Part shown: positions 3,022 through 59,214 of the stretch, one piece after another
Position numbering within the stretch: the first letter of the stretch is position 1
Layout of the letters: every line of letters begins with the position of its first letter
NCBI RefSeq assembly: GCF_006345805.1
Contig: NC_043000.1
Location: 36,890,001 to 36,954,000, forward strand
Reading direction: 5' to 3'
DNA: 64,000 nt
DNA from: Octopus sinensis
Lineage: Eukaryota
Notes under the pieces: model-generated
Told to the model about the DNA's origin: nothing
The model's input: only the letters and a program-made list of their open reading frames with translations
The model's database searches: none
Program-made: the position numbers and the translations under genes

Positions 3022-3240
3022 GTGTGTGTGTGTGTGTGTGTGTGTGACTACCTCCTAACAATCGTTGCTGGTATGTTTATAACTCCGTAACTTAGCGGTT
3101 CGGCAAAAGGCCGATAGAATAAATACCAAGCGTTACAATGAAATAGCAAGTACTACCGTCGATTCGTTCCACTAAAATTCTTCAAGGCAGTGCCCCAGTA
3201 TGGCCGCAGTCTAATGACTAGAACAACTAAAAGACAAAAG
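2581..3240 (+). mobile_element. Composite tRNA-derived SINE (family A/D): head, CORE-like body, internal (TA)n/(TG)n, CR1-type tail
   Basis: Head ggcgcaggtgtggctgt; body aaccaaagccttgcgagtga...aaagaagtcc; microsatellite 2973-3046; 3' part gtaacttagcggttcggcaaaa...ggcagtgccccagtatggccgcagtctaatgact. Homologous to 23125-23400 and 57636-58410. Confidence 0.85.
2622..2826 (+). repeat. 19-bp minisatellite (GTGCGGTGCAGGCGTGGCC)n, about 11 units, inside the SINE head
   Basis: Units start at 2622, 2641, 2660, 2679, 2698, 2717 (short), 2731, 2750, 2769, 2788 and 2807. Confidence 0.9.
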
Positions 3241-23124: not shown

Positions 23125-23400
23125 ACTAATCGCAGTCATTTTACTGCGGCCATGCTGGGGCATTGACTTTTAGTCGAATGAATCGATCCCAGTAATTTTA
23201 TTAAGCTTTGTACTTATTCTATCGGTCTCGTTTGCCGAACTGGTAAGTTACTGGGATGAAAACACACCAACACTGGTTGTCGAGCGGTGTTAGGAAACAA
23301 ACAGATGCAAACGCACGCACACACATGACAGGCTTCTTTCAGTTTCCATCAACCAAATCCACATACATGGTTTTGGTCGGCTCGCGGCTATAGAAGATAT
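23125..23400 (-). mobile_element. Family A/D SINE, 5'-truncated
   Basis: Reverse complement matches the body and CR1-type tail of 2830-3240. Confidence 0.85.
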
Positions 23401-23490: not shown

Positions 23491-25359
23491 TGTGTAGCCA
23501 TGCATATAGTGTACATGTGTGGGTACAGAACACTTTTTCATTTGGGTTAATGAAAATTATTGTATTCAAGTTTGACATCCATCATACATCCACCCAATCA
23601 TACCTGTGTCCATCCATCCATGTATCATTATAAAAATGCTTCAGTCTCTCAATGCGTTCGCTCCAGAGATGCTTAGTAACCCCATGTTGTAGCTCAATGC
23701 AAGACCAGTCAGAATTGATGCAAACACGCTGTTTACATTCTTCTAGCTCTGACTTGATCGTGTTGTAAAGTTATTACAGGAGCCGTTTCTAATAAATCAC
23801 CTCTCTTTCACTGAACATCACATGAAACTAGGAAATCTACTGCAAATGGAAAATATTCAAATGAAAGACGTACATTAGAGCACAATAAAACACATTTAAT
23901 AATATAGCATGACCATACACACATGTACATACATATAAACATGTATACGCTTGTAAGTCTACATATTTATATATGCACACACTAGCATGCATACACAAGG
24001 ATACATATACACAAGTATACATGCCACTCTCGAATGCATACATTCATAAATACGTATGTATTCATTCATATACACGCGCACACAGTCACAACACCTACAT
24101 AAACACGCTTATAGCCATATACATGAGCACAAAAACGTGTATATCCATACATACTATTTTAGATATAATTGAAAATATGGCTGTGTTTTAGCTTTCTTTT
24201 TTATTAGCATTTCTTGTTTTCCTCTGATTTCCTTGAAGTTTCTGGAAAAGCTAACTTTCTCAATTTTCCTGAGAAATAGCAAGGAAATCATACGAAAATA
24301 TGAAAAGATTTTGTAAAAAAATATACCCATGACACAGTCGTCTTCTCAATATAACATTGTGAAAAGAAAAGCTGTTTACCATTTCGTGTATGTGTATTTG
24401 TGCCTGTTAATGTTATAAATGCTTGCTTGTATGGTGGAGACAATGTGCAGATATGTGTTTGTGAATAAGGCTCTGTAGCTACCTATACAGAGATCTATCA
24501 TATATATGGCTATGTGTTACATACATACATACGAGGTGGTATGAAAACGTTGGTTCTGTAGCGTATCAACAGTTGGTAGCACACGGTTGTGTGAGCAGTG
24601 AGAGCTAGCGGAGATCATCAGGCAGTGTGCCGAGTGATATCGCTGTGTTTACTTTGCAAGTTGCGATATTCGTGCTTTTTGTGATCGCGTGTATGCTGTA
24701 GTCTGCGATTTTTGTCATGGACAGGAAGTTGGAATAAAAAACCAACGGGAAATTTTACGTTAAACTTGGGAAGTCTGCTACAGAGACATTTGAACATGCA
24801 TCGGCAAGTTTACAGCAACGGGGCAATGGGTCGTAAGTAATGTTTCGAATGGCACGGGCCATTCAAAAGCCTAAGATCGTCTCCGGAAGACAATAAGCGA
24901 TCTAGAAGACCTGCCACGAGTTTCACCCTAGGAAATGTATTGTGCATCAAGAATTCGCCCCCCACCCCCAGGACAATCAAAAGTTATACTGCGGCGTTTT
25001 GAAGCGTCTAAGGGTGGACATTCGGCAAAAGTAGCGCCATCTATGGAGCCGGAAGAATTGGATTCTTCATGACGACAGTGCACCCTGTCGCTGAGTTCTC
25101 AAGTTTCTCACCAAAACAGGATTGCTTTTGCATCCACCCTAATCTTCAGATTTAGCAACGTGTAGACGAAAATATAGCTCAAAAGCCGCCGTTTTAATGC
25201 CGTTGTCGAGACTAAGAGTGAATCGCAGAAGGTCCTCGGCGCGCTCACGGAAAACGACTACCAGACCGCATTCCAAGAGTGGCAAGAACGCTAGGACCGG
25301 TGTAGTGCTGCGCAGGGTAACTATTTCGAAGGAGATGATGTTAAAACTTAGCTAAATAA

Positions 25360-25600
25360 TACAGTTCTATATTTAAGAGATGAGAAATTATGTACATTAT
25401 TCACATTTGACCGACATTTGTCCTCATCTTGTTTGTTAACACAACGTTTCGGCTGATATACCCTTCAGCCTTCCTTGGGAAAATTTCGAACCTGGGTTCT
25501 CATTCCTAAGGTATTTTTCGATGTTATTATTATTATTCACCTCACTGCTTGTAATCGAAGCTACTAATCCCAAGATTCCGAATTCGATTCTAAGCAGTGA

Positions 25601-25648
<48 letters not shown>

Positions 25649-25784
25649 CAACAACATCGAAAATTACCTTAGGAATGAGAACCCAGGTTCAAAATTTCCC
25701 CAAGACATCTGATGAAGGCTGGAGGGTATATCACCCAAAACCTTGTATTAACAACAAACAAGATGAGGACAATGTAAATAATGT
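25360..25784. mobile_element. SINE-E inverted (head-to-head) pair inserted as one unit
   Basis: Left arm 25360-25559 is the reverse complement of the family 3' part; right arm 25560-25784 is forward. TSD tagctaaataa at 25349-25359 and 25785-25795. Confidence 0.85.
25704..25749 (+). ncRNA. Degenerate hammerhead motif (SINE-E right arm)
   Basis: gacat-CTGATGA-a-ggctg..caccc-aaaa-cc-tt-gtatt. CTGATGA is intact; GAAA and the stems are mutated. Confidence 0.55.
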
Positions 25785-26278
25785 TAGCTAAATAAGTTTG
25801 TTTTTTTATTAGACATAACTTGTTTAATGAATCTTTTGATAGATATATACATATAGTGCAATTTAAAAGATTATTGCATCGCACGACCAATAATCAGTAT
25901 TAAAACCCCATATTTATCTCCATGTGTGAAGGAAAACGGTATTAAGGTGCACGTATCATTTGGTTGGAATCGGTCCTTGGGTATGTCACAGAGTGAATAT
26001 ACAAAACAAGACGAGTGAGATTGTTCACAAAAAGACTTAGTTACACAATCTTACGTATATTTCATTAAGAATGATAGTTTAATAATCAAACTGTATTGTC
26101 AAATCTGCAGAGATGTTTAACTCTCAATTTTAATTTTATTGAGATTATTGACAATGTTGCTAGATAAGCAATGAGCTCAGAACTACTGATACGCAGTGTT
26201 TCTTCTACTTACATTAGTTTTGATTTGGTTATTTATAAATGGCTTTTTCTTCTGTTGTCTGTTACCTGGTGTTAGTAG

Positions 26279-45599: not shown

Positions 45600-45675
45600 A
45601 AATATTATTTGTTTCAGTCATTTGACTGCGGGCATGCTGGATCACTGCCTTTAATCGAGCAAATCGACCCAGAAC
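45600..45675 (-). mobile_element. Family A/D SINE 3' tail fragment
   Basis: Reverse complement reads gtcgatttgctcgattaaaggcagtgatccagcatgcccgcagtcaaatgactgaaac. Confidence 0.8.
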
Positions 45676-56885: not shown

Positions 56886-58064
56886 ACTATTGTCAGTATT
56901 CAAGGGCTAATTCATTATGTTGCAAAATATGTAATCGCTTCCATATACTCTGAAAAAAAAAAAAACTAGTTTTTATGGAAAGGCTTTATTCGGAGTGGAT
57001 GGGGCTTTAATGTCCCACAACACAAATACTTGCTTAGACTTGCAAAATTCAGCAAATGTCTTTTACTGGTGAGATTGAACTAGCTTCTTTACAATATTGT
57101 ATTTTAATGGAAATGGCTTAAATAAATTGGGTTCAGACTTTCGAAACTTGTCCAATACCAAGAAGAAAGAATTGTATGATACACACCATCTGTAAAGAGG
57201 AACAAAACATATTCTAGCATTGTTTCTGTATGATGAAGCTGGTATTTATCAATTTGAGAACCACCGGTTTAGACACCATGATGTAAATATGACTACTATT
57301 TCTAGCAGACCAAGTGACTGCATAGATTCTTTCTACATTTGTGACACAAAACATTCCGTTGTGTAGTTAATATTTCTATAAGAAAATTTTTAAAATACCG
57401 GGTAATATCTGATTAAGGTTTGACTCCACCAGAGCTGAGACTGGAGATAAAAAAATAAGTATTTTAAACAAAAATGAAAACAACCTATTCCGTTATAGTT
57501 GTCTGAAATATTAGATGTATTTTGCAGAAATACATTTAATATTCCAACATCTTATATTTATGTAAAATCAATTAATGCGAAAAGAAATGTTCTGGAATTT
57601 CAAATTACTTTTCATATTCATAATACAGGCGAGGATAGGCGCAGGCGTGGCTGTGTGGTAAGAAGCTTGCTTCCCAACCACATGTTTCCGGGTTCTGTCC
57701 CACTGCATGGCATCTTGGGCAAGTGTCTTCTACTATAGCCTCAGGCCCACCAAAGCTTTGTTAATGGATTTTTGTAAACGGAAACTGAAAGAAGCCCGTC
57801 AAGCCGACTAAAACATCTTCGAGATGTGCTTAGTTCATTACAAGTCTTTTTTATTCTTATCCTAAAACACATTAAAAAACTGTCATATTAAGCAACTAAA
57901 TACCTATTCTTGCCCAACCCTGAGAGAGAGAAAGAAAGTGTGTGTCCTTCACCACCGCTTTATAACAATGTTGGTGTGTTTACATCATTGTAACTTAACG
58001 TTTCGGCAAAAGATACCGATAGAGTAAGTATCCGTCTTTAAAAAAATAAGCACTAAGGTCGATT

Positions 58065-58325
58065 CATTATTTACATTTGAGGGGTATTTGTCCTCATCTT
58101 GTTTGTTTTTAACACAGCGTTTCGGCTGATATACCCATCAGCCTTCATCAGGTGTCTTGGGGAAAATTTCGAACCGAGGTCCTCATTCCTAAGGTATTTT
58201 TCAATATTATTATTATTCAGGTCGCTGCCTTGGAATCGAACTTGGAGTCTCGGGGTTAGTAGCCCGCGCTCTTAACCACTACGTCATATGCCCGTGAGCA
58301 TATAGAACTGTAATATAGAACTGTA
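58065..58325 (-). mobile_element. Full-length SINE-E: tRNA-like head, (AAT)n, body, hammerhead and 3' region
   Basis: Head 58293-58219 has A box tgacgtagtgg, loop ctactaa and B box gttcgattcc. Body matches both arms at 25360-25784. Confidence 0.88.
58111..58156 (-). ncRNA. Minimal type I hammerhead ribozyme motif (one core substitution)
   Basis: gacac-CTGATGA-a-ggctgat-gggtat-atcagcc-GAAA-cg-c-t-gtgtt: 5-bp stem I and perfect 7-bp stem II. U16.1 is C here but T in the 25438-25470 copy. Confidence 0.75.
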
Positions 58326-59214
58326 AGATCTATTTATTCGACTAAAATTCAAGGCGGTGCTCCAGCATGGCCGTAGTCTAATGACTGAAACAAGCAAAAG
58401 ATCAAAATAACAAAAAATTCCAGTATTTTCGAAGAGGGGAAAAAAATGGATATTGAACGCTTATGCATTCTTTGGTTCATTAAGGGTTGCGGTGTAACTG
58501 ATGAGGTGAATATTCCTAACAGCCACGACCGTGTTAATAACAAGACACTAACAGAAGGAGAAAAATCTATTCCAGGTCCATGTAGTTGTTAGCAGTGTAA
58601 TGTATTTTAGTGTTAATGTGGTTGGAAGAGCAGAGTGTAAGGCTCTTTAAATTACTTATTACGTTCGGTGTTGAAATCCAGCCGGGTATGCCCAAGACTA
58701 AATTCAGTTCCCCTAAATATTAAAAAAAACAAAACCTCTTTTGATAACAGTTCAAAAAGCAAAACCCTTTACGAAGTTATACAATTCGTGTTGGTCATCA
58801 GTAAATAACAAAAACTAATTCATCACGTGTATGAACACACTGAATTCTAGACTGACAAATCCTGAATGTACTTAGTAGCAAGGTTTTTGTTTTATCGAAT
58901 CTATAGTTTTGCTAAACTGACGATTTGTATAAAAAAAAAAACATTAATATAGAATGAAAAGAAAAATGGATGATCATTTTCCTTAAAACTCTAAATATCT
59001 AGCTTTGCCGGCGGCGCCTGTGCGGTTTCGCTTCACATCTGACGCTTTCTGTTTTCCAACGTTTCATTTTAAAACAAAAAATTATTGTTTATATGTTCTC
59101 ATTACGAACCTCACTGTCAATATCTATACAGATGATACGACATTTAAAATATTTTTTTAAAGTATGAGATACTAAAGATAAGTTTCCCAAGTACAGAATA
59201 TTCAACCAAAGACC

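What the first reader, a model, noticed from the sequence alone, without database searches (positions are those of the whole stretch)
58065..58325. SINE-E: a tRNA-headed SINE carrying a minimal hammerhead ribozyme
Seen: on the minus strand a tRNA-like head (A box TGACGTAGTGG, loop CTACTAA, B box GTTCGATTCC) is followed by (AAT)n, a ~50-nt body, and gacac-CTGATGA-A-ggctgat(gggtat)atcagcc-GAAA-CG-[T/C]-T-gtgtt. Two further copies lie at 25360-25784. No single copy is intact, but their mutations differ, so the three-copy consensus is a complete hammerhead. It has a 5-bp stem I, a 7-bp stem II, a loop-less palindromic stem III (AACGTT) and a GUU cleavage triplet. Known: minimal hammerheads with palindromic stem III act as dimers and typify Penelope-like elements and non-LTR retrozymes; an extra A after A9 occurs in the CChMVd viroid hammerhead; Schistosoma Sm-alpha combines a Pol III head with a hammerhead. 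Inference: a Pol III-driven, self-cleaving non-autonomous retroelement family. I do not know of one described in cephalopods, but it may already exist in repeat libraries without the ribozyme annotated.
Basis: partly seen in the sequence, partly recalled or inferred. Interest (0 to 1): 0.88.

Follow-up and report, generated by a model that had tools for sequence, protein, structure and literature searches.

The report
Penelope-derived short element with hammerhead
This is one decayed copy of a ~240-bp mobile element found thousands of times in an octopus genome; it is the end piece of a Penelope-like retrotransposon and carries that group's usual minimal hammerhead ribozyme motif, so it is a new member of a known kind, and no self-cleavage could be shown.

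Summary
Window 58065-58324 (minus strand) is one insertion of a ~240-nt repeat with tRNA-type A and B boxes, (AAT)n, a body and a hammerhead motif. Window 25360-25783 is a second insertion, a head-to-head pair sharing one target-site duplication. The family majority is a complete minimal hammerhead: 761 exact 46-nt copies in the genome, reversed control 0. It has every feature published for Penelope-like-element (PLE) min-hammerheads.

New here: the whole "SINE" is the 3' end of an abundant PLE. In loci L020 and L026 an RT plus GIY-YIG reading frame stops 22 nt upstream of it. Exact junction counts are 340 for the PLE-linked type and 374 for the short type. Insertions carry PLE scars: an inverted partner in 24 of 31 units, a one-sided 33-nt tail, and 8-14-bp duplications.

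The short copies share a discrete 5' end with tRNA-gene geometry. That fits Pol III transcription but does not prove it.

Self-cleavage is unsupported. Every inserted copy spans the predicted cut site, RNA-seq shows no read ends there, and Rfam hammerhead models do not match.

This scan had already noted the same family many times elsewhere in this genome. Verdict: real, a new member of a known kind, moderately interesting.

The parts
58325..58334 (-). Left copy of the target-site duplication (AATAGATCTT; 2 changes from the right copy)
   Evidence: uninterrupted paralogues of the host repeat read ...AAATCGACCCC... once
58300..58324 (-). Two short inverted fragments (12-13 nt each, ACAGTTCTATAT) of the 33-nt 'tail', abutting the 5' end of the element
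   Evidence: reverse complement of the tail end ...ATATAGAACTG seen at other insertions
58276..58300 (-). Leader TGCTCAC (family TGCCCAC), start of the tRNA-like head GGGCATATG, and A box (58286-58276)
58219..58275 (-). Rest of the tRNA-like head: CTACTAA loop and B box (58242-58232)
   Evidence: ARAGORN calls it only at a relaxed threshold
58203..58218 (-). (AAT)n microsatellite, of variable length between copies
58157..58202 (-). Body between the microsatellite and the hammerhead
58111..58156 (-). Minimal hammerhead motif. Stem I is 58156-58152 with 58115-58111; CUGAUGA is 58151-58145; the bulged A is 58144; stem II is 58143-58137 with 58130-58124; GAAA is 58123-58120; helix III ACG(C) is 58120-58117. 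The predicted cut lies between 58116 and 58115. This copy has U16.1 changed to C at 58117.
58065..58110 (-). 3' end region (...AAGATGAGGACAAATA...GTAAATAATG). This copy lacks the 33-nt tail on this side.
58055..58064 (-). Right copy of the target-site duplication (AATCGACCTT)
25360..25559 (-). Inverted, 5'-truncated partner copy that keeps its 3' end and the 33-nt tail; its hammerhead has lost CTGATGA
25560..25783 (+). Main copy of the same insertion, 5'-truncated inside the head and without a tail; the unit is flanked by TTAGCTAAATAA (25348-25359 and 25784-25795)

Best explanation
[quoted passage not shown] The module also exists as thousands of short, non-coding, SINE-like copies.

Shown:
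- The PLE reading frame ends 22 nt before the module.
- The module carries a complete PLE-type minimal hammerhead about 50 nt from its 3' end.
- Insertions have PLE scars: 8-14-bp duplications, an abutting inverted copy, and a 33-nt tail on one side only.
- The short copies share one discrete 5' end.

Inferred:
- Short RNAs start about 7 nt upstream of the tRNA-like +1 and 14 nt upstream of box A, most simply by Pol III acting on the A and B boxes.
- The PLE enzyme recognises their 3' module and copies them at staggered nicks.
- cDNA that runs off the RNA 5' end folds back on the natural palindrome TGCCC-AC-GGGCA. This would give the frequent perfect head-to-head dimers.
- The hammerhead is inherited from the PLE. 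There it may process tandem transcripts as a dimer, or serve as a structured recognition element.
- Cleavage is not part of the route by which the short copies were inserted.
For: PLE linkage:
- L026 498-1007 hits RVT_1 and is 34% identical to the RT of a second PLE family that carries a Pfam GIY-YIG domain.
- L020 1138-1362 has the GIY-YIG-like CVYSIPCSCGRLYKGE stretch aligned at the right place; the stop codon is at L020 1476-1478.
- The coding part has at least 3102 first-look candidates, with 40 scored copies at 83-89% identity, most ending exactly at the module.
- Exact junction 20-mers: PLE-type 340, short-type 374, controls 0. Two PLE-type junctions adjoin ORF hits by coordinate (C2:48492220, C4:98874675).
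- RNA reads give the PLE-type upstream sequence as a consensus in 579 reads.

Hammerhead:
- Majority motif; 761 exact copies.
- The three single T-to-C variants counted number 17-24 each, i.e. uniform decay from one intact source sequence.
- All features listed by Cervera and de la Pena 2014 (PMC4209133) are present.
- The hammerhead secondary structure lies within 0.6 kcal/mol of the minimum free energy.

Insertion scars:
-, matching Craig et al. 2021 (PMC8557442).

Discrete 5' end:
-. About three quarters of the listed short-type junctions continue as the exact reverse complement of the head.
Against: - No Rfam hammerhead or tRNA model matches, even on a copy with the intact motif. ARAGORN finds nothing at default settings.
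- RNA-seq shows equal coverage of both strands, 83% of reads running into unrelated flanks, and no pile-up of ends. So there is no sign of a discrete Pol III RNA or of cleavage. That library type would, however, miss short unpolyadenylated RNAs.
- Only three PLE-linked copies could be read as sequence. The rest rests on 20-nt patterns and coordinates.
- Whether the PLE acquired a SINE or the SINE budded from the PLE is unresolved.
Confidence: 0.75

Rival explanations
1. One reading: an independent Pol III-driven SINE or retrozyme whose propagation depends on hammerhead self-cleavage, with dimeric cleavage possibly followed by circularisation.
For: The family majority is a complete min-hammerhead. 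A few same-strand exact motifs lie 195-319 nt apart, so some transcripts could hold two sense ribozymes. A and B boxes are present.
Against: Every inserted copy runs continuously across the predicted cut site, so the templates were uncleaved. No read ends fall at the site, and no back-joined (circular) junction at the site is among the joints listed (77 further joints were not shown). Copies are dispersed or inverted, not in tandem arrays. The whole element is a PLE 3' end. Published PLE min-hammerheads cleave poorly even as dimers (PMC4209133).
Confidence: 0.08
2. There is no separate short RNA. The short copies are ordinary 5'-truncated PLE cDNAs, and the discrete end is a hot spot where nascent cDNA folds back on the TGCCC-AC-GGGCA palindrome.
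For: The palindrome is native to the PLE 3' UTR. The short-type junction differs from the PLE-type exactly at its edge. Most short-type junctions are perfect fold-back palindromes. No discrete RNA was seen.
Against: About half of all copies that reach this point end exactly there (374 against 340). That is a great deal for a 5-bp hairpin with a 2-nt loop competing with processive synthesis. The position matches tRNA-gene start-site geometry (box A at +8, start near -7). Perfect A-box and near-perfect B-box matches at tRNA spacing are unlikely to be idle.
Confidence: 0.17
3. The hammerhead motif is catalytically inert in this family and is kept only as a folded element that the PLE reverse transcriptase recognises, or as a passenger.
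For: No cleavage signal in RNA. Helix III is only 4 bp and intermolecular. The MFE fold pairs part of the CUGAUGA box with ACGU. Published activity of such motifs is low (PMC4209133). Craig et al. 2021 note that PLE clades without hammerheads proliferate well.
Against: The motif keeps all 11 core nucleotides plus G10.1-C11.1 and the palindromic 15.2-16.2 pair in the source sequence. A second, unrelated PLE family in the same genome keeps the same architecture with different helices and the published U3-A8 core covariation.
Confidence: 0.4
4. An ordinary tRNA-derived SINE mobilised by a LINE (for example CR1 or RTE).
For: tRNA-type boxes; octopus genomes are rich in SINEs classed tRNA-Core and tRNA-Deu (PMC8967140).
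Against: There is no poly(A) or LINE-type tail. Inverted partners and a one-sided tail are typical of PLEs. A PLE frame lies directly upstream in the linked copies.
Confidence: 0.02

Closest known systems
Minimal hammerheads (min-HHR) in the terminal repeats of metazoan Penelope-like elements (Cervera and de la Pena 2014, PMC4209133)
   Same: CUGANGA and GAAA boxes; an unpaired nucleotide between A9 and G10.1; the G10.1-C11.1 pair; long helix II and short helix I; no loop 3, with a palindromic 15.2-16.2 pair; location near the 3' end of a PLE; mostly found as dispersed single motifs in truncated copies.
   Different: Here the module also carries tRNA-type A and B boxes. Its short copies have a discrete 5' end, which makes them SINE-like rather than randomly truncated. 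I found no earlier description in cephalopods in the papers I could search.
Sm-alpha / Sj-alpha SINE-like elements of Schistosoma (Ferbeyre 1998 and Laha 2000, as reviewed in PMC6765202)
   Same: A Pol III-type promoter joined to a hammerhead in a short, high-copy retroelement.
   Different: The schistosome ribozyme is a canonical type I hammerhead with a helix III loop and proven cleavage, and the elements often sit in tandem. The octopus motif is the loop-less PLE type, its copies are dispersed or inverted, and cleavage is unproven.
Metazoan non-LTR retrozymes (Cervera and de la Pena 2020, PMC7229834; Li et al. 2026 preprint 10.64898/2026.07.22.740005)
   Same: Non-autonomous hammerhead-bearing elements proposed to depend on PLE enzymes and to derive from PLE terminal regions.
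   Different: Retrozymes are tandem arrays with canonical hammerheads and abundant circular RNAs. No such arrays and no circular junctions were seen here.
PLE insertion architecture (Craig et al. 2021, PMC8557442)
   Same: An inverted 5'-truncated copy abutting the 5' end, and a 30-40-bp tail at one end only.
   Different: Here the architecture is seen on a ~240-bp non-coding unit, with clear 8-14-bp duplications because targets are not microsatellites.
CChMVd viroid hammerhead with an extra nucleotide after A9 (De la Pena and Flores 2001, cited in PMC4209133)
   Same: An unpaired nucleotide between A9 and G10.1.
   Different: That is a type III viroid ribozyme with a proper helix III; the resemblance is in this one feature only.

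Membership tests
Metazoan PLE min-hammerhead | Core boxes CUGANGA and GAAA in the right order | tested here: met
   Family majority; 761 exact copies
Metazoan PLE min-hammerhead | [quoted passage not shown] | tested here: met
   CUGAUGA-A-GGCUGG...UCAGCC-GAAA
Metazoan PLE min-hammerhead | No loop 3; palindromic 15.2-16.2 pair allowing an intermolecular helix III | tested here: met
   A-CG-U followed by H17 = U
Metazoan PLE min-hammerhead | Helix II of 6-8 bp and helix I of 4-5 bp | tested here: met
   6 bp and 5 bp, each including one G-U pair
Metazoan PLE min-hammerhead | Located in the terminal region of a PLE | tested here: met
   RT/GIY-YIG frame ends 22 nt upstream of the module in L020 and L026
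Metazoan PLE min-hammerhead | Self-cleavage as a dimer | not testable with these tools
   RNA-seq shows no ends at the site, which is not a test of the source copies
Rfam hammerhead families | Covariance-model score at or above the gathering threshold | tested here: not met
   No hammerhead hit at E <= 10, even on L008 with the intact motif
tRNA-derived SINE | Internal A and B boxes at tRNA spacing | tested here: met
   TGGCGTAGTGG matches fully and AGTTCGATTCC in 8 of 9 specified positions, 33 nt apart
tRNA-derived SINE | Recognisable tRNA cloverleaf or homology | tested here: inconclusive
   No Rfam tRNA hit; ARAGORN finds none at default and of 33 copies at a relaxed threshold, as Ser(ACU)-like
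tRNA-derived SINE | Discrete 5' end consistent with a Pol III start | tested here: met
   374 exact short-type junctions against 340 read-through junctions
tRNA-derived SINE | Pol III transcript demonstrated | tested here: inconclusive
   The paired cDNA RNA-seq library (selection method not on record) shows only embedded, two-strand coverage
tRNA-derived SINE | Only the 3' tail is shared with the autonomous partner | tested here: not met
   The partner PLE contains the whole element, head included
Non-LTR retrozyme | Tandem arrays of units with canonical type I hammerheads, and circular RNAs | tested here: not met
   Units are single or inverted; no circular junction at the cut site is among the joints listed (77 more were not shown)
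PLE-mediated insertion | Abutting inverted copy, one-sided 30-40-bp tail, target duplication | tested here: met
   24 of 31 units have a partner; 33-nt tail; duplications of 8 bp or more in 10 of 31 units against 1 of 31 in the control

The most novel reading that the evidence does not exclude
A Penelope-like element carries a working tRNA-type Pol III promoter inside its own 3' end. It thereby spawns its own SINE, giving the first PLE-SINE pair with the partner in hand. The min-hammerhead would act as the shared recognition or processing module, and fold-back at a built-in palindrome would generate the inverted dimers.
Probability: 0.45. Interest if true: 0.6.

Novelty: new member of a known kind. 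Interest (0 to 1): 0.42.

Why it matters
SINEs make up roughly a tenth of octopus genomes and are mostly unclassified (PMC13282606). This family can be tied to a Penelope-like partner rather than a LINE.

With thousands of short, well-bounded insertions, it gives an unusually clear natural record of how PLE enzymes integrate: stagger length, the one-sided tail, and two kinds of inverted partner.

It also offers a defined min-hammerhead sequence, with 761 identical copies, for testing what these ribozymes do.

Tried and rejected
- Rfam scans of the window and of three copies gave no hammerhead or tRNA match. The MIR2606 and MIR7533 hits at 25488-25690 are artefacts of the inverted dimer.
- The first partner search, through the 30 best GIY-YIG loci, found only other PLE families with no similarity to the element.
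- Protein homologues of the RT fragment were found: 453 at E <= 1e-10, carrying RVT_1 and HTH_animal. Their contigs gave no DNA.
- I suspected a subfamily with a dead ribozyme (U16.1 to C, seen in 7 of 33 sampled copies). Rejected: the exact count is 24 against 761, the same as other single transitions. The excess came from sampling by similarity to the window copy.
- I considered that the 33-nt tail is the start of the PLE reading frame. Not supported: in all six forward tail-bearing copies whose downstream flank was read, the tail stops at ...ATAGAACTG and the flanks then diverge.
- No within-family stem covariation exists to test.
- Literature searches found no cephalopod description.

Full report
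**Observation.**
On the minus strand of window 58065-58324 the sequence reads, in order:
- two short inverted fragments of a tail;
- the leader TGCTCAC;
- a tRNA-like head with A box TGACGTAGTGG and B box AGTTCGATTCC;
- (AAT)n;
- a body of about 46 nt;
- the motif GACAC CUGAUGA A GGCUGAU GGGUAU AUCAGCC GAAA CG CU GUGUU;
- a 46-nt 3' end.

Window 25360-25783 holds two more copies in inverted, head-to-head order, flanked on both sides by TTAGCTAAATAA. They are therefore one insertion event.

The 58065 unit is bounded by a 10-bp duplication (AATAGATCTT / AATCGACCTT). It sits inside an older SINE-like repeat whose uninterrupted paralogues show the empty site.

**Family.**
The window's assembly is 2.72 Gb. 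It gave at least 3703 first-look candidates, and the 40 scored full-length copies are 85-92% identical to the window copy.

In an alignment of 33 copies, the majority sequence of the ribozyme region is GACAC CUGAUGA A GGCUGG AGGGUAUA UCAGCC GAAA CG UU GUGUU. Stem II is thus 6 bp with one G-U pair; the 7-bp stem is private to the window copy.

Most departures from the majority lie at the two CpG sites, as expected for passive decay.

Exact-match counts in the genome:

| 46-mer | exact copies |
|---|---|
| majority sequence | 761 (reversed control 0) |
| U16.1 to C | 24 |
| U4 to C | 21 |
| U7 to C | 17 |

This is uniform decay from a single source sequence with an intact motif. It is not evidence of subfamilies with dead cores.

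A descriptor written for PLE-type minimal hammerheads found 10 hits in the 256 kb I held, all in this family, and none in 20 shuffles.

Words of the family are held by runs carrying seven different organism labels, so it is shared among related species.

**What kind of hammerhead.**
Cervera and de la Pena (2014, PMC4209133) define the metazoan PLE min-hammerhead by these features:
- the two core boxes;
- an unpaired nucleotide between A9 and G10.1;
- a conserved G10.1-C11.1 pair;
- a long helix II and a short helix I;
- no loop 3, with a palindromic 15.2-16.2 pair, so that two copies form helix III between them.

Every one of these features is present here. They also report low cleavage in vitro, even for dimers.

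Rfam's hammerhead models do not match, even at E <= 10 on a copy with the intact motif. I therefore file it under the published min-HHR class and not under an Rfam family.

The hammerhead secondary structure is within 0.6 kcal/mol of the predicted minimum.

**Insertion scars.**
Of the 31 insertion units I could read:
- 24 have an inverted copy abutting the 5' end;
- a 33-nt extension (TACATAATTCC...ATAGAACTG) is present on one side only;
- target duplications of 8-14 bp were detected automatically in 10 of 31 units, against 1 of 31 in a displaced control, and further ones were seen by eye.

These are the hallmarks Craig et al. (2021, PMC8557442) describe for PLEs.

The tail pairs back with AGAUGAGGA in the 3' region to form a 9-bp hairpin (-11.6 kcal/mol against -5.5 +/- 2.3 for shuffles).

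**The partner.**
RNA reads laid on a near-majority copy had a common consensus upstream of the head (579 reads). The same sequence precedes the head in L009, L020 and L026. In L020 and L026 that upstream sequence is coding:
- L026 498-1007 matches RVT_1. It is 34% identical (E 2e-23) to the reverse transcriptase of a second PLE family whose frame carries a Pfam GIY-YIG domain.
- L020 1138-1362 has the GIY-YIG-like stretch at the colinear position.
- The stop codon lies 22 nt before the module.

This coding part has at least 3102 first-look candidates. Forty scored copies are 83-89% identical, and most of them end exactly at the module.

The 20-mer spanning the PLE-type junction occurs 340 times and the short-type junction 374 times; controls are 0. 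By coordinate, two PLE-type junctions adjoin ORF hits, and one lies 162 nt upstream of an exact hammerhead 46-mer.

So the "SINE" is, in full, the 3' end of a PLE. Roughly half of the copies that reach the head stop there.

**The discrete 5' end.**
The two junction types diverge exactly at the edge of a native palindrome, TGCCC-AC-GGGCA. About three quarters of the listed short-type junctions continue as the exact reverse complement of the head for 15 nt or more.

The simplest reading is that a cDNA ran off a defined RNA 5' end at TGCCCAC, folded back on the palindrome and primed on itself.

That end lies 7 nt upstream of the tRNA-like +1, with box A at +8. This is the geometry of a Pol III-transcribed tRNA gene. 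It is an inference, and the rival (a fold-back hot spot on long PLE templates) is not excluded.

Two kinds of inverted partner therefore exist: fold-back arms that start at the head, and independently primed, 5'-truncated arms that keep their own 3' end and tail.

**Cleavage.**
Every inserted copy is continuous across the predicted cut (GUU|GUGUU), so the copied RNAs were uncleaved.

In 8229 raw RNA-seq reads:
- coverage was equal on both strands;
- 83% of reads ran on into unrelated flanks;
- depth rose smoothly from 5' to 3';
- no position showed an excess of read starts or ends.

This argues against efficient cleavage of the bulk, mostly decayed and monomeric, copies. It says nothing about source copies or short RNAs.

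**Between-family comparison.**
The dominant PLE family of this genome (L038 and relatives, which insert at (TA)n) has a motif about 95 nt from its 3' end: UUGAUAA GGUUC...GAACC GAAA CAUG U. It has different helices and the U3-A8 core covariation that Cervera and de la Pena reported in a schistosome PLE.

The same architecture with different sequence is the only covariation-like support available.

**Comparison with earlier notes and verdict.**
Earlier notes of this scan describe the same family at other places in this genome. Some said that no partner was found; others called it a PLE end module. My data support the latter.

I found no description in the cephalopod or ribozyme papers I could search.

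It is a real feature, a new member of the PLE min-hammerhead class with a possible Pol III twist, and it is of moderate interest.

Noticed in passing
window 57940-58064 and 58325-58460; paralogues at window 3066-3239, 23133-23299 and 45609-45655, and in many loci: The 58065 insertion sits inside an older, very abundant SINE-like repeat (core ...CAGTCATTTGACTGCGGCCATGCTGGAGCACCGCC...TTTGCCGAACCGCTAAGTTACGG...). Uninterrupted paralogues give the empty site.
   Followed up: partly
L038 2340-2478 and 16 related loci (L031, L035, L037, L042, L046, L047, L050-L053, L055-L060): The dominant PLE family of this genome ends in (TA)n. About 95 nt from its 3' end it carries a min-hammerhead-like motif with the U3-A8 core variant (UUGAUAA GGUUC..GAACC GAAA CAUG U), conserved across two subfamilies.
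   Followed up: partly
L039 977 (+) and 2319 (-): A third PLE locus has two inverted copies of CTGATGA-A-TGACTGC...GCAGGCA-C-GAAA-CGATCG-TA. This is hammerhead-like with an 8-nt palindromic helix III but an imperfect stem II.
   Followed up: no
window 25488-25690: Rfam MIR2606 and MIR7533 'hits' (E down to 1.6e-9, far below the gathering scores) are produced by the long hairpin of the head-to-head dimer. They are not microRNA genes.
   Followed up: yes
L008 1522-1574 (family coordinates), RNA run X24: About 70 reads carry a variant in which 51 nt of the tRNA-like head are replaced by TATAG. This suggests a transcribed deletion subfamily lacking the anticodon-to-T-arm region.
   Followed up: no
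L008 1651 (hammerhead position N7), contig run X2 (organism B): In one related organism about 47% of contig depth has C instead of U at the free core position N7, against 4-7% in the other runs. This is a lineage-specific variant at the one core position that may vary.
   Followed up: no
G000 C1:197596744/197597063 and C1:210736055/210736250: Exact hammerhead 46-mers on the same strand lie 319 and 195 nt apart. Some head-to-tail tandem copies therefore exist that could place two sense ribozymes in one transcript.
   Followed up: no
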